Source: Octopus sinensis
Taxonomy: Eukaryota
Assembly (NCBI RefSeq): GCF_006345805.1
Contig: NC_043019.1
Coordinates: 10,415,360-10,479,359 of the forward strand
DNA length: 64,000 bases
Reading direction: 5' to 3'
Part shown: positions 6,005 to 46,014 of the stretch, in pieces
How positions within the stretch are numbered: position 1 is the first letter of the stretch
Layout of the letters: each line of letters begins with the position of its first letter
The notes under the pieces: model-generated
The model's database searches: none
Told to the model about the DNA's origin: nothing
What the model saw: the letters and a program-made list of their open reading frames with translations, nothing else
Translations under genes and position numbers: made by a program

Positions 6005-6276
6005 CAGTTGACATTTTTTTGTTGTTGAATTTTTTTTTTTCCCTCTCTAGTTTCAGCTCAGAGCTGCGGCCATGCTGATGCACCGCCATTCATCATTCAT
6101 TTATATGTAATATCCTGTCCTTTAATGTCCAGAAAATGGACTTTAAATGATAATCTGAAGAATGAGGGTGAAATCAGATTCTAGGATCTTGTCTTTTATC
6201 TCCTGTGCTTGATGTTATCTTCCTTTTTTTTTTTTCTTACCCTTGGAAAATATAATTAGGTACCCAATGCAAAGAC

Positions 6277-6318
<42 letters not shown>

Positions 6319-6355
6319 TATATTCTAATGTTTTCTTTTTTTGATCTCTTTCCAG

Positions 6356-6665
6356 GTGGGAGACGGAGAGATATTGTATATCTCTCGGTACTGGGCCTCG
6401 GTGGTGTTCCTGACGCCCCCCACGCCGAGATGTCTGAACTGACAGAGGGCAGCGGTGTGGGGATCAGGAAAGAGCCCCCTGTCAATGCCAAAAGCCCATA
6501 TTTTGGGCATTTAGGGGCTTTGGCACAGGCACAGGTTGCCTCGAACTTGTGCTTTAAAGTTGAAGTTGCCGAAGGGATGCAGGTTACCTGGGAAACTATG
6601 CTCGTTGATGGCAAGTTGTTTGTGGAGATACCCACCGGTATATTACCAGAAGGTTCTAAAGAAGG
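6356..6665 (+). CDS. OAZ: Ornithine decarboxylase antizyme, frameshift exon: end of ORF1 (…WETERYCISLGTGPRWCS*, TGA 6411-6413) and start of ORF2 in the +1 frame (DAPHAEMSEL…KLFVEIPTGILPEGSKEG)
   Basis: Long pyrimidine tract + CCAG acceptor (6355), GG|GTAAGT donor (6665/6666). GGG CCT CGG TGG TGT TCC TGA C matches the metazoan antizyme shift site (GPRWCS*D). LFVEIPTGILPEGSKE is the antizyme core motif. Confidence 0.97.
6408..6484 (+). promoter_or_regulatory. Programmed +1 frameshift site (UCC UGA C) and 3' stimulatory RNA pseudoknot
   Basis: Stem 1: CCCCACGCCG (6418-6427) pairs with CGGTGTGGGG (6453-6462), 10 bp with one G:U. Stem 2: TGACAGAGGGC (6440-6450) pairs with GCCCCCTGTCA (6474-6484), 11 positions with one A.C mismatch. 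The stems are interleaved (H-type). Confidence 0.92.
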
Positions 6666-7039
6666 GTAAGTCTTAATGTTTCTTTTTCTGTTCCTTAAAC
6701 TAGCTGCAGGTGTGTTTAGTGTGGTTTAAGAGGTTCTCTTTACAACCCTTGTGGTTTTGAGTTCAATCTCCCTTTTCTGGCCCCTTGGGCAAGGGCAAGC
6801 ATTTTTTACTATTGTATAGGGCCTGCCCTATCCCTTGCAAGTTAAAATTGTTACTGGAAACTGTGCTGAAGTTCATTGGGCCTATATGCACTTATGTGTA
6901 AGAATGTTTCTTTGTTCTTATCTCTCAACTCTTGACAACAGGGGTCCCACATGACTTGGTATTTATTTTGTCAAGCCTTGTGTTGATCGCATTGACGAAC
7001 CACTCAGGTCAATTAGATGAACTAAACTTCTCAAGGTCG

Positions 7040-7292
7040 TGTATGGAAGCTGCGGGCGCGAGCCCATGTGAAGCTGGCCGCGGGTGCAGATCTCAGTAGT
7101 AGTAGTAGCAAATATTTGAACAAGACCTTTGAAGTGGAAAAGAGTTCCATGCCAATGGCAGTCGAGCATGGGTCAGTCGGTCCTAAGAAGCGGGCGAAAG
7201 CTTCCACGAAAGGCGCTGGATCCATCGTTGTTGTTGTTGTAGCGGCCTCGCATCGAAAGGGAATTGGGTTAATATTCCCAAACCCGAACCAA
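7040..7292 (+). pseudogene. 28S rRNA-derived fragment in antizyme intron
   Basis: GGTGCAGATCT…GTAGTAGCAAATATT…GAAGTGGA…GTTCCATG…CATGGGTCAGTCGGTCCTAAG…ATCGAAAGGGAAT.GGGTT resembles a conserved LSU rRNA segment, with substitutions and deletions. No flanking rDNA. Confidence 0.85.
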
Positions 7293-7704
7293 TGACTTGG
7301 ACAAGTAAAATAGTTAATCTTGGAATAGTCAAGTTTCTGCTGTTCTTTTATACCAGTCTCCTCCACCGAATGATATCTCTGGCTTATTTCACCCTGGCCA
7401 TCTCCCTCTAACCCCAACCACCACTACCTTATGAAACCCTATATATTAACTGGCTCATATCAAGTCTTGCTCTAATTAAGATATTAAGATGCTAATTCAA
7501 TGGCCTTTAATTCTCTCTGCTGCATTTAATAAATTCAATGTCCTTATCAGTTGATTCCAATACAAGTGAGAGAATTCTTCACCATTTTTATTACCAAATT
7601 TCTAGAATGCATTGTCTTTGTTTCGGTTAAGTTTGAAAATGAAGACTTTAGCAAAATAACTGTCGTTATTCATTTGATGTTTGGAACATAAAGTTAATAC
7701 AATG

Positions 7705-9927: not shown

Positions 9928-10093
9928 CTCAATTCCCCTGTGAAGGTGCATCACCTACTGGTTATGTTTTTGCACCCCTAATCATAAGATAATGGTTTCA
10001 ATTCCTGAATTGGCTGGTATGATGTGTTCTTGGACACACTTAATTTCATGTTGCTTCACCAAACTCGATTGAAAATAAAATGTAGATCTAGAC

Positions 10094-10691
10094 CAGGGCT
10101 GGGCAACTGGAGTCCCTCGGCCTGCTCGATACTTTCTTGAAATGGGTGACCGCTTTATTGGGTTCAATTTCAAAATATAATTGTATGTACAGTTCTGTAT
10201 TTAAGAGATGAGGAATTATGTACATTATTTACATTTGGCAGCTATTTGTCATCTTGTTTGTTGTTAACACATAGCCTACTATAGCCTCAGGCTGACCAAA
10301 GCCTTGTGAGTGGATTTGGTAGACGGAAACTGAAAGAAACCCATCATATGTATTATGTATGTTTGTGTGTGTCCTCCCGCCATTGCTTGACAACCGATAG
10401 TAGTGTGTTTACATCTCCGTAACTTAGCAGTTCGGCAAGAGACTGATAAAATAAGTACTAGGCTTACAAAGCGTAAGTCCTGGGGTTGATTTGCTCGATT
10501 AAAGGTAGTGTTCCAGCATGGCCACAGTCAAATGACTGAAACAAGTAAAAGAATAAACGGAAAGTATTAAAAAAATTCTTGATTCTGTAATTTGATTCTT
10601 TGACTATTTGTACATAAAGTATATGAGCAGCCCTGAAAAAACTTTTGTGATTGAAGTGGGCCCGCAGTGTAATTTGAGTTGTCCAGGTCTG
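10094..10691. mobile_element. hAT (Charlie-like) non-autonomous element with nested SINE (~10270-10560)
   Basis: TIRs CAGGGCTGGGCAACT / AGTTGTCCAGGTCTG and a perfect 8-bp TSD ATCTAGAC (10086-10093 and 10692-10699). Confidence 0.8.
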
Positions 10692-13493: not shown

Positions 13494-13579
13494 CTTGGTT
13501 ACTTTGCTGGAATTTGCCGAAGAGAGACTCCACTGCAAGAATGTCATAATCTACTTCAAAAGGGATCGCAACAACAGAA
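13494..13579 (+). CDS. OAZ: Antizyme coding exon ((G)LVTLLEFAEERLHCKNVIIYFKRDRNNR)
   Basis: TTTTAG acceptor and A|GTAAGT donor. Phases join the previous exon (GG+C) and the next exon (A+GT). LLEFAEE is the antizyme signature. Confidence 0.96.
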
Positions 13580-17983: not shown

Positions 17984-18111
17984 GTTCCCTCATCAAGACT
18001 TTTATGTTTCTTGGTTTCGAAGTGGTTCCACCCGGCAATCCTCTAGTCCCGAACATTGGCGACTTAATCTTCATGGCATATACCATCCTAAGCGACGATC
18101 TCTCAGACTGA
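17984..18111 (+). CDS. OAZ: Antizyme last coding exon (SSLIKTFMFLGFEVVPPGNPLVPNIGDLIFMAYTILSDDLSD*)
   Basis: Poly-T + CAG acceptor at 17983. TF.FLGFE.V.PG.PLVP…FMAY is the antizyme C-terminal motif. ORF2 totals 254+86+128 = 468 nt, in frame to TGA 18109-18111. Confidence 0.96.
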
Positions 18112-18760
18112 TCTGCTTACCTCTATTAAGATTCTTTGACACTCAGGTTGCAATATCGTTCTTCTTTTTAATCGAAAAAAAAAAACAATTTTAAAAAAGA
18201 CCATTTTGCATCAGGGATACAGTTACCATTATTCTTAAGTGTGAATCTAAAAATAAAATCTATGGATTTTTTTCCCCCCTTATTTCCTTTTTATTAAAAA
18301 TTAGTTTTGTAGAAATTTATTTGAATTTTTTTTCTTTTTTTCTTGTGTCTAGATAAGATGTGATTGCACAAAAAACTCAAAAATTCAAAAAAATAAATAG
18401 CCCGAAAAATACACATATATATATATAATATAAATATATATGTATATATTATATGTATATATATATATATATAATATATATACATGTCTTTATTTTTTTA
18501 ACATTACCATTTAAACAATGGAGATGTCCTTGCAACCTTTCTTTCCAAGAATCTTACCCTCTGTCAAAGAAAAAAAAAAACATTGTATCCATGAGTTATA
18601 AAAAAATTTAAAAAATCACCCCCCAAAAAAAAAGAATATATACAGAAAAATTACAAAAAAAAAATAAAAAAACTAACTTAAACCATTGTACATTTGTCTT
18701 AATCTTTTGTGTTATGTTTCTTAATATCCTGTTTTTGATGTTATTTGTTGCTTGGGATCT
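18112..18760 (+). terminator. Antizyme 3' UTR with candidate polyadenylation signals
   Basis: AATAAA at 18252-18257 and 18663-18668, ATTAAA near 18293, and GT/T-rich sequence after ~18690. Confidence 0.5.
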
Positions 18761-25689: not shown

Positions 25690-26290
25690 ATCGCAGAGGT
25701 CCAGCCCGTTAAATCAAAAGGGAGCTGGGAAGCCATATGCTGGAGGTCATGTGATCGTGATTTTCTGAGTGGAAAAGGCCACGTGATTGGTTACATAGTC
25801 CTGTAAAATTACACCCACCCTCTGTGAGCCAAACCACTCGATGCAGGAGTTATCTACTGTGCCCAAAGCCTTGATGTAGGTACAGGAATTGACCCTGAAG
25901 CCCTGCATGAAGAAGTGAAGTGGCATGTCCGGACTCTCGTTGCCTGCTACACCCAGGGACATCAGATACAACTGGAAGCTGGTGCACATCGCTTTGGGTA
26001 TCATCGTGGGCTCCACGCATCGTCATCTATTACTCCTTCTGCTCAGACTAAGACCCTTGTTAAAGTTCTTTACAAAGGGAAATTATCAGAATCTGAAGAG
26101 CTTCTCAAGTATTTGAGCTTATTAAGTATGCTCTATGAATGGACCTCTCGGTTCTTCTGGGTCATCTCGGACTGCCCTCTTCTAATCACAATTTTTTTTA
26201 TTAATGTCCCCCGATCACACACTCCTTAGCTACACACAAAATAAAAAATGCTAGGAAGGCAGGTTGGTTACTCTCAAATTCTTTGTAAAC
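25690..26290 (-). mobile_element. Tc1/mariner superfamily (maT/DD37D-like) transposase fossil
   Basis: Minus strand LLNKLK…SDSDNF…, LMSLGVAGNESPDMPLHFFMQGFRVNSCTYIKALGTV…QD…H…, then HDHMTSSIWLPSS…DL, resembling the WPP.SPDLNPLD motif. Frameshifted. Confidence 0.7.
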
Positions 26291-26625
26291 TCTTAAATAT
26301 ATCTCCATCTGTGAATATACATACTATCAAACAAACATGATTTTTATTGAAGTCCTAATATTTTTTGTTGAATATTTTCTTAAATACTTTCTTGTAAACC
26401 GTTTTTAAGATTTTCTTATTATTATCATAGAATATATATATATATTTTAATACTTTTGTGAGAACCAGTACTTAACACAACAAAGCTTATACAAAGGTTT
26501 TACATTTTACAATCTTTTTCTAAAAAAGTGAAACCGGTCAAGTGAATAAACATCTTTAAAATTGCATCTTCAAATCTTCTTTCATATATATTTCCACTCG
26601 TGCGGCACCTTACAACTTCATTTGT

Positions 26626-26659
<34 letters not shown>

Positions 26660-27581
26660 TATGTTAAATAAAATAAGATAACAAGGCTAAGGCAGTGTAA
26701 TATTTCTAAGACATTTAAAAAGAGAAAGGTGATCTTACGGCTGTTTCAGGGAAATAAATAATAAATCATCATCAAAGACGAGGATTGCAATAGAAGAAAT
26801 TAGTAAAGTTCATTTGTGTGTGTATGTATGTGTTTGTGTATGTGTATGTGTGTGTGTGTGATTGTGTGCGTGTGTGTGTATGTGGGTATGTGTGTTTGCG
26901 TTTATTCCCTACCACCGCTTGACAACCGGTGTTGGTGTGTTTACGTCCCCGTAACGTAGCAGTTCGCTCATATAAACGACAAAAGTCCGAGGTTTAAAAA
27001 GAAACAAAAATGTACTGGGGACGGTTGATTAGGCAAAACATTCCCCGAGGTGTTGTCCCAGCATGGCCGCACTTTAATGACTGAAGCAAGTAAAATAATA
27101 AAAAAATGAAAGGATTTTGTTCGCCGCGCTAAAGATTGAGACCAAGGATATAGAAAGTAAGAATAATAACTGAGAATAAAGAATGAGAATAAAGACAGAG
27201 AATGAGGGGCGAGAATAATGATCGGGGAGAAAGAGAGTGAGATTAACGAATGAAAGTAAAGAATGAGAATAAAGAGAAAAGTGATTAAAGATTGGTGTAA
27301 AGGCCAAGTGTAAAGACAGGAATTAAAGCTTAAAGAGAATGAATAAATAAAATGCAGACAAAGAATAAAGCTTGATAAAAATGAGAGAGAATAAATACTG
27401 GAATAAAGAATAAAGGCAGAGAATAAAGAATAATGGTGTGAATAAATACGGTGAATAAAGAGCAAGATTAGTGTAAAGGCTGAGGAAAAAATTGAGAATA
27501 AAGTAAGATGAAGACAGGAAATAAGGAGAGGATTAAAGATTTAGAATAAAGACTGAGAATACGACTTTTATTAAAACAAGA

Positions 27582-28995
<1,414 letters not shown>

Positions 28996-29316
28996 ATGAT
29001 GATGATGAAATGAGAAAAGAAAACCCGCTTCAGGTGGTTTTTGAAGTATTTTTGGTACCTGGAGGAAAAGGTGTGTCTTTTGTTCTGTTTACGTGGAGCA
29101 TTCCAATTTCTTTATTGGTTTGTGTTGGTATTGAAGTGTACTATGTGTGTATGTGTGAGGTGTGTGTGTGAGCGTGTGAGTCTGTGTGTGTGTGTGAGTG
29201 CGTTTGTGTATGTATGTATGCATTTGTTTCTTCCAGGTGTCGCTAGGTGATAATGTTGTTTTTGGTTTTTTAAATTTTGTTACCGATTTTGTTATTCTTG
29301 ACGTTTATAACGTTGC

Positions 29317-29347
<31 letters not shown>

Positions 29348-29664
29348 GGTAGTGGCGATGGTCGTGGTGGGAGTGGCTCAGCTGTTGTTCCTATAAGCAA
29401 ACATTTCGAGAATTAGTCGTGATGGCAGTTGTGCTCATCGTTAATGCAATTAGTGTGTTTATGTCTGTCTGTCTGTCTCTGTCTATACCGGAGTAAGCAC
29501 ATAAATGTGAAACAAGGTGGAAAAAAGAGTACTCAAATACCAGAGGTAGAGTAATATGCTTTATTTAAAAACAGCAGAAATATAACAAAAGCTGTTACTC
29601 AGAGTTTCACGTTCCCGTTCGTCGGACAGTTTTGTTAAAAAACAAGTATATGTAGGTTTATGCA

Positions 29665-29711
<47 letters not shown>

Positions 29712-29767
29712 ATATATAACATACATAGACATATACGTACATACACGTATATATATAGATCTATATA

Positions 29768-29809
<42 letters not shown>

Positions 29810-29839
29810 TATATATATATAAATATATAGACATATACG

Positions 29840-29896
<57 letters not shown>

Positions 29897-30059
29897 CATA
29901 TACGTACATACGTAAATATATATTATAGACATATACGTACATACGTATATATATATATACATACATATGCATATACACAAACATTTATGTATGTATATAT
30001 TTATAGTTTCCATTATTTTGTCCAACCGCTGTATGTATGTGTGCATGTATATGTTACCA

Positions 30060-30745
30060 GTTGCAATAACATGCGACCTGTCTATCTCATGTCGTTTGTG
30101 AGCGCTAGCAGTACCATGCAGTCCAGTGGAACCTGCTGCATGGTCGGGTTGTCGACGCTAAATTGGTAACCCCACTGAGATTGCTCTGTGAGGACGGTGA
30201 CTTGACTGAAAAACGACGTCTGTGAAATGGTGGATGAAATCAGGAAAGCCAACGGCCATCCAACAGAGGATTAATCCTGCTATGTCTCATGAACATCTTT
30301 AGTTCCTGCGGCAATCATCGACAAATTGGTGACTTTGGCACAGAAAACACAGTGGCTGCGCAGAATATTGTCGGGTTTTTGAGCAATGAGCAGGCAGAAC
30401 AGGTTCAGTCAGCGGAGAACTACGTGGATGAGAATGTAGGCACGGTGTACCACACTAACTAGGAGAGACCCCTAGTCCTTTTTAGGACACCGCTCTCGGG
30501 GAATGAGGAGTCAGATGTTAAACCTACGACTTGATGGTAACCAATGATGTTGGTCAGGTGTTCTTTATGAGGTTTCTGTCATCGTGGTTCCTAGAGTGGG
30601 ACTTGCTGCGTGCAAGACCTCTCCTCTGTTTGAAAAGCATCATGCACAGACATCATTTGGCATGCAAGTATCGTAATCAACATTCATCCATGTGACCGAT
30701 TCCGAAATGCATCAGACGGTGACCATTACCGAGAAGGAGGAAGCG
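30060..30745 (-). mobile_element. Decayed L2/Crack-like LINE fragment
   Basis: Minus strand HWLPSSRRFNI resembles LHWLP…R..FK of L2/Crack ORF2. Heavily mutated. Confidence 0.45.
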
Positions 30746-30769
30746 GCCATTGTGTATGCTTGCATGCTT

Positions 30770-31140
30770 GCAAGTATGTACGTGTGTATGTATGCATGTA
30801 TGTATGTGTGTATGATGTATGTATGTGTGTATGTATGTATGTATGTGTATGTATGTATGTATGTATGTTGTATGTATGTATGTGTGTATGTATGTATGTA
30901 CTGTATGTAGGAGTATGTGTTGTATGTATGTGTGTGTATGTAGCATGTATGCATGTATGTGTGTATGATTTATGGTGTGTTATGTATATATGAATGTAGG
31001 GTATGTTTATGTATGTATGTATGTGGTATGTGTGTATGTATGTATGCTGTATGTATATGTATGGGTGTATATATGTATGTATGTATATGTATGTATGTAT
31101 GTGTGCATGTATGTATGTATGTGTGATTATGTATGTATGG

Positions 31141-31171
<31 letters not shown>

Positions 31172-31320
31172 TGTATGTGTGTATGTATGTATGTATGTGT
31201 GTATGTGTGTANNNNNNNNNNNNNNNNNNNNNNNNNNNNNNNNNNNNNNNNNNNNNNNNNNNNNNNNNNNNNNNNNNNNNNNNNNNNNNNNNNNNNNNNN
31301 NNNNNNNNNNNTTAATAAAT
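30770..31320. repeat. (TATG)n array containing a 100-N assembly gap (31212-31311)
   Basis: Directly visible. Confidence 0.95.
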
Positions 31321-31846
31321 AAACATAGCATATATACATACGTATATGTACGTACCTACATCTACATGTATATATACACGCATATATGGGCACAGGGACA
31401 CCAAAAAAAACGTTGACAACAATGAGAAACGAAAACATAAACACAAAACCAAGGAACTGGACATTTTTCTAAACAACAAAAAATAGAGTACAGGACAAAT
31501 AACACAAGGAAACTTCCCTTCTTCAGTCACCATGGTTTCATCTACTCTGCGTTTCGAAGGTGAAGGCGTTACGCATCTTCGATAGAACTTTCCTTCCCGC
31601 GAAAAGCAATTAAATAAAATTTGAGATCTTTTTGCGGAGGGGTAAAAATGGTAACAAAAACAGGACAGTAACGACAGTACAAAATATAAGCAGTAAAAGA
31701 CAGGACAAGGAGAATAACAAGACAAGAAGGGCTGTTAAGCCGAACGAGAAAATGTATTACGAACGCTAATATATATATTAAATGATTTTGGGGTATGTGC
31801 TCATACTTATATAGGTATATGTGTAACTTGTTTTATAGATTTGAAT

Positions 31847-31957
31847 CTCTGAAGAGGCCGTGAAATATTTTTGTTAATGTCTCATTTATACCTGCAATAT
31901 ATAGTTAATATAAGTTAAATGGGACATGCTTATGTGCATGGCCGAAACAGCTGTCAG
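31847..31957 (+). ncRNA. Minimal type-I hammerhead ribozyme motif (Penelope-like)
   Basis: CT-CTGAAGA-GGCCGTG…CATGGCC-GAA-ACAGCTGT-C-AG: intact core, 7-bp stem II, palindromic stem III, GUC cleavage triplet, only 2-bp stem I. Confidence 0.7.
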
Positions 31958-32150
31958 TTATAATGTATATGTATTTTTATATCTTATTATATTTATTTAG
32001 TTATACCTCATTATATTGATTGTAATTATTGTACTGTATTAATGTCTAATCTTAATGCTCTTTTGTAGTGTTTTAATAAAGTATATGATTCGGTATTATC
32101 TGATAGTTGATGAATGATTTAGATAATATTTCTCATTTTCTTATTTTGTG

Positions 32151-32200
<50 letters not shown>

Positions 32201-32565
32201 TTATATATATATATATATATCATTCTAAAAACGTGTAGTAAATAAACAAACGAACGTATACTAGATACACGAGCGAACAGAGAACACGGAATGTCACCAC
32301 AACTTCTCATATGAACAGTATATGTTGGTTTCTCTATTTACTACGCTTTATTTTTAATTATATATATACTTAGGTATGTCAAATTTTTCGTTTGTTGTCC
32401 TCTTTTTATTTAATCCTGAATTCGTGTGTGTGTGTAGGCATGGTGATACAAACAGAAAAATACAGAACTCAAAATACGAGTGTATGTATATTTCTTCTAT
32501 TCATATTTAAGCAGAAGCAACAGACTGACTGGAGGCCAGAGGTTTCGTGCGTTCGCACTTATCGA

Positions 32566-32627
<62 letters not shown>

Positions 32628-32868
32628 AAATACTAAACTCGAAAAGGAAAAAATACATAACATCTTAATTACAAACCAAAATATCAACGAAAAATCTTTG
32701 AACGTATGTGTGTGTGTGTGAGAGAGAGATAAAGTGGAATTCAAAGCGATAGATATTAATCTGCGTCGGCAATGAGACTTCTATTATTAGAAAAAGTAAA
32801 CGAAAGAGTAATATATATATATATATATTATATATATATATATTAATATATATATATATATTATATAT

Positions 32869-32925
<57 letters not shown>

Positions 32926-33112
32926 ATATAGTTCAGCAAAATTCAGATTCAAATCATGTACGCACATGGTTATATACACGCGCATATACCCACTCAGTTA
33001 TGCACACACACACACGCACGCGCGCGCCACCACACATATACACACTCATGCACACATGCTTTCACACACACACACACCAACACACACACACACACACACA
33101 CACCACACACAC

Positions 33113-33163
<51 letters not shown>

Positions 33164-33259
33164 CCAAACATGAAAACACAAAGAGAAAACACAACAACGC
33201 GAGGACGTGGAACAAGTATAGTGTTATTGGACGCTTAGGAAAGGAAAGAAAGAAGGAGG

Positions 33260-33294
33260 ATTTAACGTTTCGAGCGGAGCTCTTCGTCAGAAAC
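33260..33294 (-). ncRNA. Minimal hammerhead-like motif in a (TA)n-anchored element (~33160-33410)
   Basis: Minus strand GTTT-CTGACGA-A-GAGC-TCC-GCTC-GAA-ACGT-T-AAAT. Confidence 0.6.
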
Positions 33295-34099
33295 ATAGAA
33301 AAAGGAAAGATCCAAGGAAGGAAAGACGGAGGAAAAAAATCGCCAACGATACACACGCGATCACGCGATAATAATTCTGTCAGGTCGCCGTCTTTCGTCC
33401 CACAAATATAGTTCTTTCTTCTATCGGCATAGGCCTGGAATTTGTCCGAGGGGGGTGGAGCTAGTCGGTTATATCGACTCCAGTGCTAATTTTCTCGACC
33501 CCCAAAAAAGATGAAAGGCAAAGTCAACCTCGGCGGCATTTGAACTCAGAACGTAAAAGTCCGGAAGAAATGCAACTAAGCATTTTGTCCGACACGCTAA
33601 CGATTCTTATTTCTTTATTGCCCACATGGGGCTAAACATAGAGGGGACAAACAAGGACAGACAAAGGGATTAAGTCGATTACATCGACCCCAGCGCATAA
33701 CTGGTACTTAATTTATCGACCCCGAAAGGATGAAAGGCAAAGTCAACCTCGGCGGCATTTGAACTCAGAACGTAAAAGTCCGGAAGAAATGCAACTAAGC
33801 ATTTTGTCCGACACGCTAACGATTTCTGTCAGCTCAGCACCTTCCGTCCCGAAATCGATCGAGTGCCGGAAGCAGTAATTACAAATGATGAACGAGTAAG
33901 ATAGCCAAGGGGCCGACGACGTTCCCCTAATTTTCAGTGCAAGGGTGAAGGGTTTATAGATGTAACCCACCACCCCACTCCTTCCTAACCTCAAACCTCA
34001 CAGATTTTAGTTTAACCCTGAGTTCCTTGAAAATCGTTTCTGTCACTAAACGTGGGGGGAGAACCAAGAGAGAAACCAAAAATAACCAGTATGTTTGAC

Positions 34100-34900
34100 A
34101 ACTGTGACACACAGACACACACACACACACACACACAAACAGCTTTACATGCGCATACACTCGCTCACAACTATGCACACACATACACACACAAACAAAT
34201 ATACATACACACTCACACAAAGCTATGCACACACACACACACATGCATACACACACACACACACAGAGCTTTACATACACATACACTCACTCAGAACTAT
34301 GCACACGCACACACATACACAAACAATATATATACATATACACTACACAACAGCTATGCACACACACCGACACACATACACACACATATACTACACTCAC
34401 ACAATACACATACACATCACACACACGTACACACAATATGCGCATGGTTTATATCACGCAGACACACAGCATACACATACACACGACACACACACATTAT
34501 ACACATGGTATACTACATCGCAATACACACGCTATATACACATACACACACTCAAACATATACACATACACACACTCACACACACGTACAACATTATGTA
34601 CTCACATATATACCGCGCATATACACAACAGCTATATACACATACCCACCTCACACACAATTATGTACGCACATGGTTATATACACGCGCATATACACAC
34701 AGCTATATACACATACACACACTCACACATATACACATACACACACTCACACACACGTACACACAATTATGTACGCACATGGTTATATACACGCGCATAT
34801 ACACACAGCTATATACACATACACACACTCACACATATACATATACACACACTCACACACACACATATACACACTCATGCTTTCACACATACACAGATAT
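34100..34900. repeat. (CA)-rich compound minisatellite (TATGTACGCACATGGTTATATACACGCGCATATAC unit, also at ~32957)
   Basis: Unit recurs at ~32957, 34662 and 34768. Confidence 0.85.
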
Positions 34901-35112
34901 ATAACTTGATATACATACACACATATACACATACGAGCACACATTCCCGCATACAGCTAAAAGTATATATGTATGTATATATATATATACACTCACACAC
35001 AAACCTTACAACATATAGAATTATATTTTCTATTCAGCAATTTCCAGCAGCAAAACCCCACCCGTCATTACCACCCCCTGTGGCTGACATCCTCTGTGAT
35101 TGGCGCCAGACA

Positions 35113-35149
<37 letters not shown>

Positions 35150-35936
35150 ACACACACCACACAAGCACAATATTGGAGGCACTCGAAGATGGTCATTGCA
35201 GATGTTTGCCGTTCTTCCGTCGGACGAAGTTAATTTTTATTTATATCCAAGCATACTTCGATTTACGTGGTTTCGAGTTACGTCTTTTTCAACTTTACGT
35301 CGTTTCTAGTTACCTCTTTTTTTATTTGACCTCGTTTCAGGTCAATTGACGTAGTTTCGAGTTACGTCTTTTTCAACTTAACGTCGTTTCTAGTTACCTC
35401 TTTTCTTTTTCTTTTTTTTTTATTTTGCCTCGTTTCGGGTACGTCTTTTTCAACTTTACATCGTTTCCGTATTTGTCCCCCACAACCGCTTGACAACCGG
35501 TGTTGGTGTGTTTACCTCCTCGTAACTTTATAGTTCGGCAAAAGACACCGATAGAATAATTACCAGGCTTAGAAAAAAATTTAGTACTGGTGTCGATTCA
35601 TTCTTCAAGGCGGTGCTGCAGCATGGCTGCAGTCAAATGGCTGAAACAACTAAACGATAAAAGATTACCTCTTTTTCGACTTTGCGTCGTTTCGGGTTAC
35701 GTATTTCTTTTCGACTTCACGACGTTATTTTATCTGTTAAGATAGTAATGGAAAGAAATACACCTCAACTTCCGTCGATTTACCCCACTTTGCGTCGGTC
35801 CCAGCATAACAAAATTCTATCGGTCTCTTTTGCTGAACCGCCAACGACGTAAACACCAACATCGGTTGCCAAGCGACGGTAGGGGTACAAACACACACAA
35901 ACAAACATAAATATATATATTGGCTAATCTGACAAA

Positions 35937-36026
<90 letters not shown>

Positions 36027-36184
36027 ATATATATTATATATATATATATATATATAGGCGCAGGAGTGGCTGTGTGGTAAGTAGCTTGTTACCAACCACA
36101 TGGTTCTGGGTTCACCCACTGCGTAGCACCTTGGGCAAGTGTCTTCTACTATAGCCTCGAGTCGATCAATGCCCGTTGATATAT

Positions 36185-36215
<31 letters not shown>

Positions 36216-36230
36216 TATGTATATGATATA

Positions 36231-36268
<38 letters not shown>

Positions 36269-36622
36269 GTATAATATATGGTACAACCGATGCTGGTGTG
36301 TGTTTATGTCCCCGTTACTTAGCGGGGGATAGAATAAGTACTGGGCTTACAAAAGATGAAGTCCCGGGGTCGAGTTGCTCGACTAAAGGCGGTGCTCCAG
36401 CATGGCCGCAGTCAAATGACTGAAACAAGTAAAAGAGTAAAGAGTATATATATATATATATATATATATTATACATACATGTATTTATGACGGGCAAAAA
36501 TGTAGTTTTCATGTTACATCCCATGTCTTGGCACAATTACGGACAGAAGTTCGTTTTTTTTTTCTTTAATTGGCAAAATTTGTCTCGATCTGTGATTATG
36601 CTGATAGAGAGAGAGAGAGACA

Positions 36623-36684
<62 letters not shown>

Positions 36685-36904
36685 CTATACGCGTGTGGCC
36701 GTTCCGCTATTCGATGTATTAAGATACTAATTTTACGGGTGTATGTGTGTGTTTGGGGCGGTGAATGAATATGTATGTGTCAGTGTGAGTACTTGTGTGT
36801 GTGTGTGTGTGTGTGCATGCTTGCGTTTACATGTGTGTGAAAGTGTGAGTTTGCGCGTGTGTATGCAAAAATAGGTGGGAGTTCATGTATATGTTGTTAC
36901 TTCT

Positions 36905-37150
36905 GCTAACTGTACAGTGTCTGTGCTTGTATGCGTGCGTGTACGAGTGTGTGTGTGTGGTGTCTGCTTGTGTATGTGTGTGTCTGTGCTTGTATGCGTG
37001 CGTGTACGAGTGTGTGTGTGTGTGTGTCTGCTTGTGTATGTGTGTGTCTGTGCTTGTATGCGTGCGTGTACGAGTGTGTATGTGTGTGTCTGCTTGTGTA
37101 TGTGTGTGTCTGTGCTTGTATGCGTGCGTGTACGAGTGTGTGTGTGTGGT
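36905..37150. repeat. ~45-50-bp GT-rich minisatellite (GTGTCTGTGCTTGTATGCGTGCGTGTACGAGTG… x~5)
   Basis: Directly visible tandem units. Confidence 0.9.
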
Positions 37151-37554
37151 TCGGTGTCACGCTCAGTAACCGGCTGTGGGATGTAGTTGAATGAGTGTGG
37201 ATACACATATAAATATAGAAACGCCGAAAGAAAAACTGGGAAGACAGAATGGAGTAGAATGAGAGCGAATATACAACATGGAAAGAGAATTATATCGGTA
37301 GATGTAGTGTGTAATGCACACACATGTATGTATGTATGTATGTATGCATGTATATATATACATACATATATTATATATATATATATAATCATACATACAT
37401 ACATACATATATATATATACATACATACACATATATATTTATATATATGTATGTATCTATGTATGTATGTATGTATGTATATATGTGTGTATTATATATA
37501 TATGTATTATATACACTCGCATATATATCTTATATGTATTCATAAATAAATATT

Positions 37555-37624
<70 letters not shown>

Positions 37625-37899
37625 GCATACATATACGTAAACCATATATATGTATTTATGTTAGTGTCTACATTTTGGTATATGATTGTGTGTGTGTGTG
37701 TACACATACACTCACACACTCGTACACACGGGTGGTGAAGTAGGATGAGGTGGGGGGAAAAGGTGAATTGTGCAGGGTGGAAAAAACAGAAATAAGGACT
37801 TTTCGTTTCCGCGTCGTATAGAAAGAAAAAAGGAAAAAAAAAAAAAGGAAGAGAGAGAGAGAAAGAAAGAGAGAAGAGAGAGGACAGAGGAGGGGGAGG

Positions 37900-38387
37900 A
37901 GAGAGGAGGGTAAAACGAAACCGGACCGGAAGTGACGTCAAATCGTGTCTCTCCAAGTTTAAAGAAAGAAAAGTACGGAGGTGGGGGGGAAGACGACAAA
38001 AAAAAAAACATGAATTGCTACGGCAGAGACCATTATAGGAAATATATAATCACATTAGCAGAAGGAGATGATAGCCAGACGTTGTAGGAGATAATAACAA
38101 TAACAATAACAGCAAATATAATAAAATTTCACGAGAAAGAGAGAGAGAGAAAAAAAGGAAATGGTTGACAACTGGAAAGTATGTGATGGCGTCAGTTCCG
38201 CTCTCGTGTGAAAGAAGACACCAAAGTTGACGACTTCCGTTGTACGTTATTGTGTACGTCGAGAGCTGCCGTAACGCATTTAGGCCAAGACCAGGTTTTT
38301 ACGTGGGCCACGGTTGGCGGCCCACCTTTACTGCCTTGCCTGCTGCTCGTAGATTTTTTTATGTATAAACAGAAATAAGTGTGTAGA

Positions 38388-40114: not shown

Positions 40115-42901
40115 ATGTCGTTTCCGCCTGGTCCTCCTATAGGCTTGCCTCACATGGCGCCAGGCATGATGACACAGAGTTACACTTTCACACCCATGGG
40201 GATGGTTCCAATGGGTGTCAGTATGATCCCGCCAGCCTCCGTCATGAGGCCCATCATAACGTCCACTACAACAGCTGTTGCGGCCCTGGCCGCCGCTGTT
40301 CCCTCAGTGTCGTCTTCGTCCACCCATCATCTTTCCATCACCTCTGCCACAACCCCCATGTTCAATTCCGGCCAAAAACATCTTCAACAGAATCACAAGA
40401 AGCTGATCCCTCAGGAGATTCCAAAGACAGAATTATTTACGAAAGAAGAGAAGCCGCCCGTGACCACGGTGTTTGTGGGCAACATAAGCGAGCGGTCGCC
40501 TGATACAATGATCAGGGAAATGTTACAACGATGCGGGAACATTCTTAGCTGGAAAAGAGTCCAGGGTGCTTCGGGGAAGTTACAGGGTTTCGGATTCTGT
40601 GAGTACGAGGAGCCTGAGTCTACATTAAGGTGTATTCGTCTTTTAAACGAATGGCAGATTAATGACAAGAAACTTGTCGTCAAAGTCGATGCCAAAACCA
40701 AAGCGCTGCTGGATGAATACAAAGCTAAGAAGAAAGTTGAGCTTAATAAATGGTTAGAGCAGAACCAGAGCCAGAAGAAATCATCTTCAAAAGAGACAGC
40801 TCCAAAAGTGACCACTTCAAAAGATGAGACAGAAACCAAAGAGAAAAGTGATGGGGAGAAGAGCAAGGAGTCTGCGAGTGGTTCTGGGGATGTGAGTAAT
40901 AAAACTGAGAAATCTCCATCATCAACAACTGAGAAATCTCTAACAGAATCGGAGAAACCGTCGACAGAATCGGAAAAACTTCCAGCCGAAGAAACTGAAG
41001 AACAATATCAGGAACAAGTTAGCAAGGAAACTAGGGTCAATGATTTGGATCAGATAACCATGAGAGAAGACTGTGTGACGAGAGCCGGCTTGGAAGCAAT
41101 CATGCGAGACTATGCTGAGGAACTTGCAAAAGAGCCACCTGTTGATCAAGAGAAGGAGGCCAAACAAGCTCAGAAGAAGAGTAAAGAAGAAAAGGTGCAG
41201 GCTGATAAAGGTTTGGACGATATGGAGCTGGAAGAAGAGAAGAAGGAAATAATTAACCGTGAGATAAAGAGTTTCCGAGATTTGCACAAGGAAGATGAAA
41301 GCAGTGAGAAGTCGAGGCATCGGGAGCGAGACAGACGTGCGCACGATGAACGCGTGCGAAGGGAGAAGATGCGCAAGGGGAAAGTTTACGAACGAGAACA
41401 CAGGGAACGCAGCTGGTCGAGGAGTATGTCGCGATCTTGCTCCCGGTCAAGGTCACGCTCGAGATCGCGCAGGGACCGGTCTAGAGACAGCTCTCGCGAA
41501 AGGTCGTGTGACAGATCGCGCGAAAGATCGAAAGACGGGGACAAACGAGGAAGAGACTGGGACCTTGAGGACGAAGAGGAGGCTTACGAGAGGAGGAAAC
41601 TAGAGAAGAAATTGCGTGAGAAAGAGGCGGCGTACCAGGAGAGATTACGGAACTGGGAAGCCCGGGAACGGAAGAAGAGTAAGGAATATGAGAAAGAGAA
41701 AGATCGAGAAGAGGCTCGGAAGTGTGAGGAAAGTAAAGAGGCACGAAGGCTGAAAGAGTTTTTGGAAGATTATGATGACCTAAGGGACGACCCTAAGTTT
41801 TACCGAGGCAGCGCATTGTCCAGACGGCTGAAAGAACGAGAAAAAGAGAAGGAAAACGACGCAAGGGACCGACAACGAGAAAAGGAAGAGCTGGAAGAAA
41901 TTAGGCGAAGATTAATGGAAGAAGGTCATGCTGACCCCGACGGTGAAATTGCTAAAATGGAACGAGAGAGAGATGAGCATTTGAAACCTCGACTGCACTT
42001 ACTTCCCCCCTTACCAGAACCCAAACTGCGTCACAACTCCCCAACCACTTCGCATAAGCGGGAACAGAAATCTGAAGACTCGAAATCAACCCTGCCCCGC
42101 ATGCAGGCCACTTTGAAACTTGTCACCTCAAAAGTAAATAATTCCCATTCGAACAGTATATCGCAGACTGAAAGAAAGGGAAAGATCTCAAAAACTGGTG
42201 CCGATGGAAAGTGTGATGGTCGAGAGAGTGGGAGCGAAGGAGAAGATGCGGAAATTGATGCTGGTAACAGCTACAACAAAAACAATAACAGTAATGCGGG
42301 TCCTGCCAGAATCATGAACACCCAACCAGTTTTCAGTCCGGCTGTGAAAGAAGAGGTTACCACGAAGATTGGGTTCAACGCCATGAAGCTACGCACCTCT
42401 GACAGTCCCAACGATTTGTCTAATACAAAGCGGAAAAAAATCACTATCGGAGATGTGTTTGGCCAAGACGACTATTGCTCGGAGGCCTCGCAGCGTAAAC
42501 GCAAGCTCGTGCCGCTGGACTACGAGGAAGAAAAATCCGAGAAAAAGGCGGCCACCTCCATAGAAGAGAAACGACAACAGATCAAACAACTCATCGAACA
42601 GATTCCGACCGGCAAGGAGGAACTATTTGCCTACTCCCTCGACTGGAGCATCGTCGACCAGGTCCTCATGGATAAACGCATCAAACCCTGGGTTAATAAA
42701 AAGATTGTCGAATACATCGGAGAAGAAGAAGCAACCCTCACGGAATTCATCTGCCAGAAAGTGGTGGGCCGTAGCACCCCTGCCAACATTCTCAACGATG
42801 TAGCAATGGTACTGGACGAGGAAGCAGAGGTGTTTGTGGTCAAGATGTGGAGACTGTTGATATACGAGACAGAGGCCAAAAAAGCTGGACTGGTCAAATG
42901 A
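40115..42901 (+). CDS. RBM25: RNA-binding protein 25 (RED120), 928 aa, single coding exon: Pro/Met-rich N-terminus, RRM, RE/RS-rich region, C-terminal PWI domain
   Basis: MSFPP start. TTVFVGNISE…LSWKRVQGASGKLQGFGFCEYEEPESTLR…KKLVVKVDAKTK (RRM), KEFLEDYDD.RDDPK.YRG, and RIKPWVNKKIVEYIGEEEATLTEFICQKV…VLDEEAEVFVVKMWRLLIYETEAKKAGLVK (PWI) all match RBM25. Confidence 0.96.
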   Translation: MSFPPGPPIGLPHMAPGMMTQSYTFTPMGMVPMGVSMIPPASVMRPIITSTTTAVAALAAAVPSVSSSSTHHLSITSATTPMFNSGQKHLQQNHKKLIPQEIPKTELFTKEEKPPVTTVFVGNISERSPDTMIREMLQRCGNILSWKRVQGASGKLQGFGFCEYEEPESTLRCIRLLNEWQINDKKLVVKVDAKTKALLDEYKAKKKVELNKWLEQNQSQKKSSSKETAPKVTTSKDETETKEKSDGEKSKESASGSGDVSNKTEKSPSSTTEKSLTESEKPSTESEKLPAEETEEQYQEQVSKETRVNDLDQITMREDCVTRAGLEAIMRDYAEELAKEPPVDQEKEAKQAQKKSKEEKVQADKGLDDMELEEEKKEIINREIKSFRDLHKEDESSEKSRHRERDRRAHDERVRREKMRKGKVYEREHRERSWSRSMSRSCSRSRSRSRSRRDRSRDSSRERSCDRSRERSKDGDKRGRDWDLEDEEEAYERRKLEKKLREKEAAYQERLRNWEARERKKSKEYEKEKDREEARKCEESKEARRLKEFLEDYDDLRDDPKFYRGSALSRRLKEREKEKENDARDRQREKEELEEIRRRLMEEGHADPDGEIAKMERERDEHLKPRLHLLPPLPEPKLRHNSPTTSHKREQKSEDSKSTLPRMQATLKLVTSKVNNSHSNSISQTERKGKISKTGADGKCDGRESGSEGEDAEIDAGNSYNKNNNSNAGPARIMNTQPVFSPAVKEEVTTKIGFNAMKLRTSDSPNDLSNTKRKKITIGDVFGQDDYCSEASQRKRKLVPLDYEEEKSEKKAATSIEEKRQQIKQLIEQIPTGKEELFAYSLDWSIVDQVLMDKRIKPWVNKKIVEYIGEEEATLTEFICQKVVGRSTPANILNDVAMVLDEEAEVFVVKMWRLLIYETEAKKAGLVK

Positions 42902-44067
42902 AAGTGACCAGCAGGGGGGGAGGATCTTTACTGTTTTTGACATCTCATAATCATATACATTCATCGACTCATTCCTCATACACATGCATATATACAGCCA
43001 CATATACACACATGCACACATACATGTATACATATCTGTATATACATAACTTTACACATATACCTCAACATATACGCAACAATGTGTGTGTAAATTCTTT
43101 TAAAAATATATACACATATATATATATAAAAGACTGATACATATATTTATGTATAACTATATATATATATATATGTATGTAGGTATATATATATATATAT
43201 GTGTGTATATATATATATATGTAAATGTTGCAGACAGAGACACATTATATACGCACACACATAATATATAAACGCACATATATATGCATACATTTATATG
43301 CATGTGTATAAAATATTATTTTCATAGGTATGAATGTATGGATGTATATATATATATATTTATACATATATATGTATGTATGTATATATATATACACACA
43401 ACACAAATTACATGGAAAAAAGACTGCTACAATTGTGAGGTTACATATCTACAACTCTATATGCATGTAAGTGCATGTGTATGTATGTATGTATATACAC
43501 AACGCATTTTCACCTACACATCTAAATGAACTGATGTGATATTTAAAGGTGGGGGGGAGGGGTTTAAAAGAAGAATATTTTAAAGGGAGGCTTGGAGGGC
43601 AAGCAGGGGCAGAGAGGCTGAGGAACAACATTATTGAACTGTAAAACTATGAGAGAAAAAAGGGGCTGGGGGCAGAAAAAAAAAATGGAGAATGAAACCC
43701 AAAACTGTACAAACAAAATTGTTGACTTTGGTGGTGGTCAGGATTTTTTTTTTTTTTTTTTTGCTTTTTTTTCCTGACCCCCCCCCCCCTAAACTGTTCC
43801 CTACACAAAGGATTTGTTGTCATGACTACATGTAAACAACAACGAAACAGTGAGTGGAATATTTATCTGAGCAGAAAAAAAAATGTTGACAAGTTTTAAT
43901 CTTTCCCTTTTTCCTGTGTAACAATGTTCTGGCATACACTTAACATACACACTGGTTAATATATATATACATATATATACACTGGTTAATATATATACAT
44001 ATATATATATATACACATACATGCATACATATATACACATACATGCATACATATATATACATACATG

Positions 44068-44111
<44 letters not shown>

Positions 44112-44155
44112 CATGCATACAGTTATATATATATGTATATACACATATACATACA

Positions 44156-44363
44156 CACGAGGGGGTGTTGAAAAGTTCCTGGCTTTGGGTAAAAGAAAAT
44201 ACAGGGGGATCGATTAATTATGATTTTATCCAACATATTCCCCTCTCAGATTCACACACTTATTGCAGTGGTCCTTCAGTTTTCCCAAGCCCCATAAAAG
44301 AACTCAGAAGGTTGGCCTTCCAACCAACCCTTAAAGCCAGGAAGTTTTTAGTACCCACTCCTA
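44156..44363. mobile_element. Tc1/mariner-type MITE (second copy at ~52962-53180)
   Basis: TIRs GAGGGGGTGTTGAAAAGTTCCTGGCTTT / AAAGCCAGGAAGTTTTTAGTACCCACTCC; the internal sequence is shared with the 52962 copy. Confidence 0.75.
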
Positions 44364-44440
<77 letters not shown>

Positions 44441-44618
44441 ATACATATACACATTTGCATTTCTGTGTTCATCTTGTGGATACATATATATATATATACA
44501 CGCATACACATTTATGCAAACTTATGCACTCACTCACATTAATATACATTTGCATCTACATGTTATATGCATAGATGCATTCATACATAGATATACAAAT
44601 TTACATATTTCTGTGTGC

Positions 44619-44661
<43 letters not shown>

Positions 44662-45209: not shown

Positions 45210-45242
<33 letters not shown>

Positions 45243-45357
45243 AGACAAAAGGTAATTGTATATCATTTGTGCATGCATGCATTTAACAGGGTGAAGAAAA
45301 GCTATATGTATTATTTAGTGTTTGTGTGTGTATATACATATATAATTATATATATAT

Positions 45358-45408
<51 letters not shown>

Positions 45409-45982: not shown

Positions 45983-46014
<32 letters not shown>

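What the first reader, a model, noticed from the sequence alone, without database searches (positions are those of the whole stretch)
6356..6484. Antizyme +1 ribosomal frameshift cassette with a fully readable pseudoknot
Seen: ORF1 ends W-C-S-stop (TGG TGT TCC TGA) and the antizyme protein continues only in the +1 frame from GAC GCC CCC CAC. Starting 4 nt after the stop is an H-type pseudoknot (S1 6418-6427/6453-6462, S2 6440-6450/6474-6484). Established: metazoan antizymes are made by polyamine-induced +1 frameshifting at UCC-UGA, stimulated by a 3' pseudoknot, and target ornithine decarboxylase for ubiquitin-independent degradation. Inference: this is the polyamine sensor of this animal. Automatic ORF callers misannotate it (track ORF 6316-6669 starts in the intron).
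Basis: partly seen in the sequence, partly recalled or inferred. Interest (0 to 1): 0.75.

Follow-up and report, generated by a model that had tools for sequence, protein, structure and literature searches.

The report
Octopus antizyme frameshift site and pseudoknot
This is the ornithine decarboxylase antizyme gene of Octopus sinensis, with the textbook +1 ribosomal frameshift site (UCC-UGA) and the invertebrate "class IIa" RNA pseudoknot; it is a real feature, but it is already described for molluscs and already present in RefSeq.

Summary
ORF1 ends TGG TGT TCC TGA (6402-6413). The +1 frame from GAC (6412), spliced through exons 13494-13579 and 17984-18113, gives a 155-aa product that matches Pfam ODC_AZ (E 7.6e-21) and solved human antizyme 1 (E 1e-29).

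- Stem 1 is 6418-6427/6453-6462, 10 bp.
- Stem 2 is 6440-6450/6474-6484, 10 of 11 pairs with an A·C mismatch.
- Only 1 of 5000 dinucleotide shuffles gives a comparable pseudoknot.

Across 72 distinct homologous mRNAs stem 1 is 99.7% paired, with compensatory double changes in both stems. The sequence is almost identical to the oyster class IIa pseudoknot of Ivanov and Atkins. A covariance model built only from non-cephalopod members hits 6396-6485 at 85.6 bits.

Transcript contigs from related octopods keep the in-frame TGA and confirm the splice junctions. The window is 100% identical to Octopus sinensis CM016881.1. RefSeq already carries the fused 204-aa product, XP_029649766.1, flagged "LOW QUALITY PROTEIN".

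Octopod peculiarities are minor: UGA-C context, a 12-nt loop 1, a 2-nt hinge, and a loop-3 complement of the shift site.

The parts
6354..6355 (+). AG acceptor of intron 1. Exon 1, with the ORF1 AUG, lies 3,879 nt upstream of window position 1, outside the window.
   Evidence: The cDNA L001 junction maps to 6356. Exon 1 was found in the O. sinensis locus L088 at 10001-10092, where L088 13880 corresponds to window position 1. No exon 1 was found in the window.
6356..6665 (+). Antizyme exon 2. It carries the last 18 codons of ORF1, the frameshift cassette and the first 84 2/3 codons of ORF2. The donor GTAAGT is at 6666.
6375..6407 (+). Conserved 5' element upstream of the shift site (..TATA...CTCGG..C.GGGCCTCGGTGGTGT). 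It also encodes the G-T-G-P motif at codons -7 to -4.
   Evidence: Gapless consensus of 70 distinct homologues anchored at the shift site. Modules A/B/D are described in PMC1874602.
6408..6413 (+). Shift site UCC-UGA. UCC (Ser) sits in the P site, and UGA is the ORF1 stop; its U (6411) is skipped.
   Evidence: Conserved in the alignment.
6414..6417 (+). 4-nt spacer CGCC. C6414 gives the weak termination context UGA-C; 73 of 78 homologues have UGA-U.
   Evidence: Termination context is discussed in PMC1874602.
6418..6427 (+). Pseudoknot stem 1, 5' arm, CCCCACGCCG.
6428..6439 (+). Loop 1, 12 nt. The family range is 11-34 nt, median 19.
6440..6450 (+). Stem 2, 5' arm, TGACAGAGGGC. The conserved core is 6441-6450, and A6446 sits in a conserved A·C mismatch.
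6451..6452 (+). Hinge AG, 2 nt. The 11th stem-1 pair that leaves a 1-nt hinge in 49 of 72 homologues is A·G here.
6453..6462 (+). Stem 1, 3' arm, CGGTGTGGGG.
6463..6473 (+). Loop 3, 11 nt. It contains UCAGGAA (6464-6470), a perfect complement of the shift-site heptamer 6407-6413. This complement is seen only in Octopus and Argonauta.
6474..6484 (+). Stem 2, 3' arm, GCCCCCTGTCA. The conserved core is 6474-6483.
13494..13579 (+). Antizyme exon 3, part of ORF2.
   Evidence: 100% identical to cDNA L001.
17984..18113 (+). Coding part of antizyme exon 4, with stop TGA at 18111-18113. The 3' UTR continues to about 18636.

Best explanation
This is the frameshift exon of the single-copy-looking ornithine decarboxylase antizyme gene of Octopus sinensis.

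Ribosomes start at an AUG in exon 1, 3.9 kb upstream of the window, and translate a 49-codon ORF1. They arrive with UCC (Ser) in the P site and UGA in the A site. Three features then favour a shift:
- termination is slow, because UGA-C is a poor context;
- a conserved 5' element lies in and behind the ribosome;
- a class IIa H-type pseudoknot starts 4 nt after the stop and sits at the mRNA entry channel.

A fraction of ribosomes, increasing with polyamine concentration, skip U6411 and continue at GAC in the +1 frame. The result is a 204-aa antizyme whose C-terminal ODC_AZ domain binds ornithine decarboxylase monomers and shuts down polyamine synthesis.

Shown here: the two-ORF architecture, the family membership of ORF2, retention of the stop in mRNAs, the conservation and covariation of the pseudoknot, and its identity with the oyster class IIa element.

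Inferred from homologues: that the shift is +1 rather than -2, polyamine dependence, stimulation by the pseudoknot, and ODC degradation.
For: ORF anatomy.

Family membership of ORF2: Pfam ODC_AZ at 74.6 bits against a cut-off of 24.2. Human OAZ1 structures 4zgz, 5bwa and 4zgy match at E about 1e-29 over the ODC-binding domain.

Transcripts: the polyadenylated cDNA contig L001 (O. bimaculoides type, 98% identical) shows the exon junctions 6665|13494 and 13579|17984 and keeps the TGA. The same holds for L002, L003, L085 and L087, and for genomic Argonauta.

Covariation over 72 distinct cassettes:
- 91% of cells are paired, against 38-53% when the partners are slid.
- 9 pairs carry double-sided changes.
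- 0 of 500 shuffles reach the observed covariation score.
- The result is the same without cephalopods.
- Compensatory changes alter amino acids on both arms. For example, CACGTCG/CGACGTG in L045 changes Ala to Val together with Gly to Asp.

Identity with the known family: the Crassostrea virginica cassette is nearly identical. Covariance model R1, built from 60 non-cephalopod sequences, hits 6396-6485 at 85.6 bits, E 3e-19, and gives no comparable hit elsewhere in the 64 kb.

Literature: the class II pseudoknot was described and mutationally tested in oyster, where disrupting stem 2 equals deleting the pseudoknot (PMC1874602). Abalone ORF2 protein acts on ODC (PMC4551804).

Existing annotation: the RefSeq model XP_029649766.1 equals the predicted fusion.
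Against: No experiment or ribosome profiling exists for octopus. No same-species transcript contig was available, so the cDNA evidence comes from sister species.

The stems lie in coding sequence, so part of the conservation could reflect protein constraint.

Nested-only folding prefers an extended hairpin (stem 1 plus 6407-6413/6464-6470, -34.2 kcal/mol) over anything containing stem 2. That program cannot model pseudoknots, however.

The hinge is 2 nt, not the single nucleotide quoted for class IIa.
Confidence: 0.93

Rival explanations
1. The frame break is an assembly error or a pseudogene lesion, and the real mRNA has one continuous ORF. This is what the RefSeq 'LOW QUALITY PROTEIN' label implies.
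For: RefSeq flags the O. sinensis and O. bimaculoides models as low quality. Only one genome assembly was examined for this species.
Against: The same TCC-TGA with the same frame offset occurs in independent transcript assemblies from several cephalopods, in the Argonauta and oyster genomes, and in about 70 other metatranscriptome contigs. The arrangement is the defining feature of the family (PMC1874602).
Confidence: 0.01
2. Only stem 1, a simple hairpin, stimulates the shift. Stem 2 is an apparent pairing produced by conserved protein sequence (EG.GVG / EPPV), as in Priapulus and Rhodnius, where stem 2 is absent.
For: Stem 1 is far better conserved (99.7% paired). Stem 2 carries a conserved mismatch and its outer pair is often unpaired. 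The encoded residues G13, G15, V16, G17, P22 and V24 are invariant in the protein alignment. PMC1874602 reports lineages that have stem 1 only.
Against: Stem 2 shows double-sided compensatory changes at 4 to 5 pairs, for example GGAGAGC/GCUCUCU in L068, L080 and L081. This region lies N-terminal to the ODC-binding domain (Pfam match starts at ORF2 residue 67), while the loops between the arms vary freely in sequence and length. In oyster, disrupting stem 2 equals deleting the pseudoknot (PMC1874602).
Confidence: 0.05
3. In octopods the cassette toggles between the pseudoknot and an extended hairpin. In the hairpin, loop 3 (UCAGGAA, 6464-6470) pairs with the shift site (UUCCUGA, 6407-6413), which hides the site and excludes stem 2.
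For: The seven Watson-Crick pairs are part of the minimum-free-energy fold (-34.2 kcal/mol, z = -2.45). The complement is present in O. sinensis, the O. bimaculoides-type cDNA and Argonauta hians.
Against: It is absent from the other cephalopod-type transcripts: L087 has one central mismatch, and L002, L003 and L085 have two. It is also absent from all 69 non-cephalopod rows. The three species that share it are about 95% identical across the whole region, so shared ancestry is enough to explain it. A ribosome sitting on the shift site has in any case unwound this helix.
Confidence: 0.04

Closest known systems
Class IIa antizyme frameshift pseudoknot of invertebrates (type example Crassostrea gigas; Ivanov et al. 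2004; Ivanov and Atkins 2007, PMC1874602)
   Same: UCC-UGA shift site, 4-nt spacer, stem 1 CCCCACGCCG/CGGYGUGGGG, stem 2 GACAGAGGGC/GCCCCCUGUC with the same A·C mismatch, 11-nt loop 3, and the same 5' conserved block. Even the intron position 52 nt upstream of the shift site matches C. virginica.
   Different: UGA-C instead of UGA-U. Loop 1 is 12 nt against 15 nt in C. virginica and a family median of 19. The hinge is 2 nt because the optional 11th stem-1 pair is A·G. The outermost stem-2 U-A pair is also present in C. virginica.
Class I pseudoknot of vertebrate antizyme 1 and 2 (the Rfam antizyme frameshift element, as I recall it)
   Same: Same shift site, same role and position (3-5 nt after the stop), H-type topology, stems of about 10 bp.
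   Different: Unrelated sequence and a more compact structure (about 60 nt). No Rfam family matched 6200-6800 even at E up to 10. PMC1874602 reports that stem-1 sequence identity matters in class II but not in class I.
Class IIb pseudoknot (aphids, fleas, psyllids) and the stem-1-only derivatives (Priapulus, Rhodnius)
   Same: Homologous stem 1.
   Different: Class IIb has a 4-14-nt hinge and a different stem 2. The stem-loop forms lack stem 2 altogether. The octopus element has a 2-nt hinge and a canonical stem 2.
RefSeq XP_029649766.1 / XP_014777834.1 'LOW QUALITY PROTEIN: ornithine decarboxylase antizyme 2-like' (O. sinensis / O. bimaculoides)
   Same: XP_029649766.1 is residue for residue the ORF1+ORF2 fusion predicted here, 204 aa.
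   Different: It is annotated as a corrected low-quality model, not as programmed ribosomal slippage. The '2-like' and '1-like' names borrow vertebrate paralogue labels.

Membership tests
Ornithine decarboxylase antizyme (Pfam PF02100 ODC_AZ) | ORF2 product matches the ODC_AZ domain above the curated threshold | tested here: met
   74.6 bits against a cut-off of 24.2, E 7.6e-21, profile positions 27-113 of 114. Human OAZ1 chains match at E about 1e-29.
Ornithine decarboxylase antizyme (Pfam PF02100 ODC_AZ) | Binds ODC monomers and promotes their ubiquitin-independent degradation | not testable with these tools
   Inferred from homology only. The nearest functional data are from abalone (PMC4551804).
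Antizyme +1 programmed frameshift site | Short ORF1 ending in a shift-prone codon plus UGA, with ORF2 in the +1 frame | tested here: met
   UCC-UGA at 6408-6413. ORF1 has 49 codons, with exon 1 read from L088. ORF2 continues from GAC at 6412.
Antizyme +1 programmed frameshift site | The in-frame stop is present in the mature mRNA (no editing or splicing fix) | tested here: met
   Transcript contigs L001, L002, L003, L085 and L087 all carry TCCTGA. These are sister species, not O. sinensis itself.
Antizyme +1 programmed frameshift site | Weak termination context 3' of the stop (C or U) | tested here: met
   C at 6414. PMC1874602 states that C is the least efficient context after UGA.
Antizyme +1 programmed frameshift site | Conserved 5' stimulatory sequence adjacent to the shift site | tested here: met
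   GGGCCTC.G..GTG.TCCTGA and upstream blocks are at least 90% conserved in 70 distinct homologues, and all are present in the window.
Antizyme +1 programmed frameshift site | Frameshift efficiency rises with polyamine concentration | not testable with these tools
   Needs a reporter assay or ribosome profiling.
Class IIa invertebrate antizyme pseudoknot | Stem 1 of about 10 bp with the family's conserved sequence, starting a few nt after the stop | tested here: met
   CCCCACGCCG/CGGTGTGGGG starts 4 nt after UGA. The arms are the same 10-mers as in most homologues and are homologous to oyster's, which differs at one 3'-arm base, CGGCGTGGGG.
Class IIa invertebrate antizyme pseudoknot | Stem 2 pairs the stem-1 loop with downstream sequence, supported by covariation | tested here: met
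   10 of 11 pairs in the window. The family shows double-sided changes in both stems, and 0 of 500 shuffles reach the covariation score.
Class IIa invertebrate antizyme pseudoknot | Very short hinge between the stems (1 nt, against 4-14 nt in class IIb) | tested here: met
   2 unpaired nt (AG, 6451-6452). 23 of 72 family members likewise lack the 11th pair that reduces the hinge to 1 nt. This is well below the class IIb range.
Class IIa invertebrate antizyme pseudoknot | Recognised by a model built from other members | tested here: met
   R1, built from 60 non-cephalopod sequences including C. virginica, gives 85.6 bits, E 3.3e-19, full length at 6396-6485. The next hits have E of at least 0.24.
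Class I vertebrate antizyme pseudoknot (Rfam) | Match to the curated covariance model | tested here: not met
   No Rfam family matches 6200-6800 at E up to 10.

The most novel reading that the evidence does not exclude
Octopods may have retuned the ancient class IIa cassette. The candidate changes are UGA-C, a near-minimal loop 1, a 2-nt hinge, and a loop-3 heptamer that can sequester the shift site. Separately, the conserved A·C mismatch in stem 2 (A6446) lies inside a quasi-continuous coaxial helix of about 21 bp. That could make it a target for the extensive coleoid A-to-I editing. Editing there would turn the mismatch into an I·C pair (Glu to Gly) and modulate frameshift efficiency, so that RNA editing would regulate polyamine homeostasis.
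Probability: 0.04. Interest if true: 0.5.

Novelty: already known. Interest (0 to 1): 0.15.

Why it matters
The finding adds no new biology. It is a correct recognition of a classic recoding signal in a cephalopod genome.

Its practical value is for annotation:
- The O. sinensis and O. bimaculoides RefSeq entries treat a programmed frameshift as a sequence defect.
- The O. vulgaris and UniProt entries lack ORF1 and the first six ORF2 residues.

It also documents that the class IIa pseudoknot, with its conserved A·C mismatch and its intron position, is conserved from bivalves to octopods. The 72-sequence alignment and the covariance model could seed an Rfam family for class II, which Rfam appears to lack.

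Tried and rejected
1. Rfam scan of 6200-6800 at E up to 10 found nothing. I read this as Rfam covering only the vertebrate class, not as absence of structure.

2. I looked for exon 1 in the window with a DNA pattern allowing 3 mismatches, blastn, and tblastn of the ORF1 peptide. It is absent. It was later located 3.9 kb upstream in L088.

3. I provisionally concluded, where no cephalopod name appeared, that cephalopod antizyme was unannotated. One search showed this was wrong: the named Octopus and Argonauta entries sit inside the cluster represented by an unnamed Logan contig.

4. I looked for signs of A-to-I editing in the genome-versus-cDNA mismatches. The seven differences are G>A, T>C, C>T, C>T, A>C, A>T and A>C, so none is A>G. 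L001 is also from another species, so this comparison is uninformative.

5. I tested whether the extended hairpin that pairs the shift site with loop 3 is conserved. It occurs only in Octopus and Argonauta.

6. Nested-only minimum-free-energy folding cannot represent the pseudoknot, so it was used only for stem 1 and the alternative helix.

7. Supplementary alignments of PMC1874602 are not held, so I took the oyster sequence from the C. virginica genome instead.

Full report
**1. Observation**

- After the acceptor AG at 6354-6355, the exon opens at 6356.
- Frame 0 from 6357 reads WETERYCISLGTGPRWCS and stops at TGA 6411-6413.
- The +1 frame from GAC 6412 reads DAPHAEMSELTEGSGVGIRKEPPVNAK... 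to the GTAAGT donor at 6666.
- The mechanical ORF 6316-6669 in the ORF list starts at a TTG inside the intron.

Stem 1, CCCCACGCCG 6418-6427 with CGGTGTGGGG 6453-6462, is 10 of 10 pairs with one G·U. Stem 2, TGACAGAGGGC 6440-6450 with GCCCCCTGTCA 6474-6484, is 10 of 11 pairs with an A·C mismatch at 6446/6478. The spacer after the stop is 4 nt.

In 5000 dinucleotide-preserving shuffles of 6414-6500, only one produced two crossing helices of at least 10 pairs each. The stems evaluated alone are worth -19.1 and -15.2 kcal/mol.

**2. The gene**

A probe alignment located two further exons. Reading their borders and splicing them gives exon 3 at 13494-13579 and exon 4 at 17984-18113. The result is a 155-residue ORF2.
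- ORF2 matches Pfam ODC_AZ at 74.6 bits, against a cut-off of 24.2.
- It matches the solved human antizyme-1 chains that are complexed with ODC or antizyme inhibitor, at E about 1e-29.

The polyadenylated transcript contig L001 is 98% identical in exon 2. It joins the exons exactly at the predicted junctions and keeps the in-frame TGA. It also supplies ORF1: MLCASKAIVIDENFGPQVKEEAMPSLQRSDT|WETERYCISLGTGPRWCS, 49 codons with a second in-frame AUG. The NCBI mollusc models have the same architecture.

Exon 1 is not in the window.

**3. The organism and existing annotation**

An intronless 928-codon ORF at 40115-42901 is 96% identical to an Octopus bimaculoides RBM25 protein. The protein cluster containing the antizyme hit holds named members from O. 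sinensis, O. bimaculoides, O. vulgaris and Argonauta hians.

The O. sinensis RefSeq model XP_029649766.1 (204 aa, 'LOW QUALITY PROTEIN') is residue for residue ORF1 plus ORF2 as predicted here. The O. vulgaris and UniProt entries are 149-aa ORF2 fragments that start at an internal Met.

The genomic locus of that model, L088 (GCA_006345805.1, CM016881.1, near 10.4 Mb), is 100% identical to window 1-28111. It places the ORF1 AUG 3,879 nt upstream of window position 1, with exon 1 ending ...GATAC|GTAGGT.

The gene is therefore already in public databases. It is annotated as a corrected error rather than as programmed slippage.

**4. The pseudoknot in its family**

A scan of metatranscriptome contigs with an ORF2 alignment returned 80 antizyme mRNAs. 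Their cassettes align almost without ambiguity.

On 72 distinct sequences:
- Stem 1 is paired in 99.7% of cells, with double-sided changes at four positions: C-G to U-A at three of them, and G-C to A-U.
- The stem-2 core is 78-98% paired, with double-sided changes at five positions.
- The whole structure is 91% paired, against 38-53% when the 3' partners are slid by 1-3 columns.
- None of 500 column shuffles reaches the observed covariation score.

The result is unchanged when cephalopods are left out.

Some compensations change the encoded amino acids on both arms (for example L045). The loops vary freely in length: loop 1 is 11-34 nt. The region lies N-terminal to the ODC-binding domain. Taken together, this argues for a constraint at the RNA level.

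The A·C mismatch is conserved (unpaired in 59 of 72). The outermost U-A pair of stem 2 is lineage-specific (paired in 25 of 72).

**5. Comparison with what is known**

Ivanov and Atkins (PMC1874602) describe a class II pseudoknot that is distinct from the vertebrate class I. [quoted passage not shown] In oyster, stem disruptions reduce frameshifting, and loss of stem 2 equals deletion of the whole structure.

The Crassostrea virginica genomic cassette reads TCCTGATGCTCCCCACGCCG...GACAGAGGGCAGCGGCGTGGGG...GAGCCCCCTGTC. This is the same element, and the intron acceptor sits at the same distance (52 nt) upstream of the shift site.

A covariance model built from 60 non-cephalopod cassettes finds 6396-6485 at 85.6 bits, E 3e-19, full length, and nothing comparable elsewhere in the 64 kb.

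Rfam has no match. This is consistent with Rfam's antizyme element covering the vertebrate class only; that last point is from memory.

The 5' conserved block is also present, as is the Gly/Pro-rich nascent-peptide motif, here G-T-G-P at codons -7 to -4 (compare PMC5009743).

**6. Octopod peculiarities**

- All five cephalopod-type sequences have UGA-C, where 73 of 78 sequences overall have UGA-U. According to PMC1874602, C is the least efficient termination context after UGA.
- Loop 1 is 12 nt, near the family minimum.
- The 11th stem-1 pair present in 49 of 72 sequences is A·G here, which leaves a 2-nt hinge.
- Loop 3 contains UCAGGAA, a perfect complement of the shift-site heptamer. This gives the extended hairpin that nested folding prefers (-34.2 kcal/mol). 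It is shared only with the O. bimaculoides-type cDNA and Argonauta. It would be unwound by a ribosome at the site, so I regard it as probably fortuitous.

**7. Mechanism**

The most likely mechanism is the canonical one. Slow termination at UCC-UGA-C, the pseudoknot at the mRNA entry channel and the 5' element raise the chance that the ribosome skips U6411 and reads GAC. Polyamines enhance this. The full-length antizyme then inhibits and destabilises ODC, which closes the feedback loop.

The architecture, conservation and family membership are shown here. Polyamine dependence, the +1 rather than -2 nature of the shift, and ODC targeting are inferred from homologues.

**8. Verdict**

The element is a canonical member of an already described class, in a gene that RefSeq already models. 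Interest is low. The value lies in annotation, and in a ready-made alignment and model for class II, which Rfam appears to lack.

Noticed in passing
window 7102-7326 (+), inside antizyme intron 2: A 225-nt fragment matches eukaryotic LSU rRNA (Rfam RF02543, 91.8 bits, E 2.4e-20, model positions 1457-1888). It is an rRNA-derived insert or repeat sitting in the intron.
   Followed up: no
window 40115-42901 (+): A single uninterrupted 928-codon ORF encodes an RBM25-like protein with RRM and PWI domains. It is 96% identical to a 925-aa O. bimaculoides protein but only 60% identical to that species' second, 795-aa RBM25. Local GC is 0.48 against about 0.37 for the surroundings. It looks like an old, conserved, intronless (retrogene-like) paralogue.
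   Followed up: partly
window 6464-6470 versus 6407-6413: Loop 3 of the pseudoknot carries UCAGGAA, a perfect Watson-Crick complement of the shift-site heptamer UUCCUGA. It is shared only with the O. bimaculoides-type cDNA and Argonauta hians, and is absent from other cephalopod-type and all non-cephalopod cassettes.
   Followed up: yes
window 10356-10557, 48680-48870, 54161-54362, 58240-58649, 62252-62463: At least five copies (88-92% identical) of an interspersed repeat of about 200-400 bp, which also lies upstream of antizyme exon 1 (L088 5197-5604). One copy sits in antizyme intron 2.
   Followed up: no
window about 26000-38000 and 43000-46000; N run near 30800-31100: Dense (TA)n, (CA)n and (TATG)n-type microsatellite tracts produce long spurious ORFs, with strong GC and AT skews. 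There is also an assembly gap of N bases.
   Followed up: no
L084 4140-4160 versus window 6342-6356: The intron that precedes the frameshift exon is at the identical position in oyster and octopus, 52 nt upstream of UCC and in the same phase.
   Followed up: partly
loci L016, L021, L062, L065, L073, L075: Some marine metatranscriptome antizymes with a class IIa pseudoknot use UUU-UGA (L021) or GUU-UGA (GGGTTTGA) instead of UCC-UGA. This shows shift-codon turnover on an unchanged pseudoknot.
   Followed up: no
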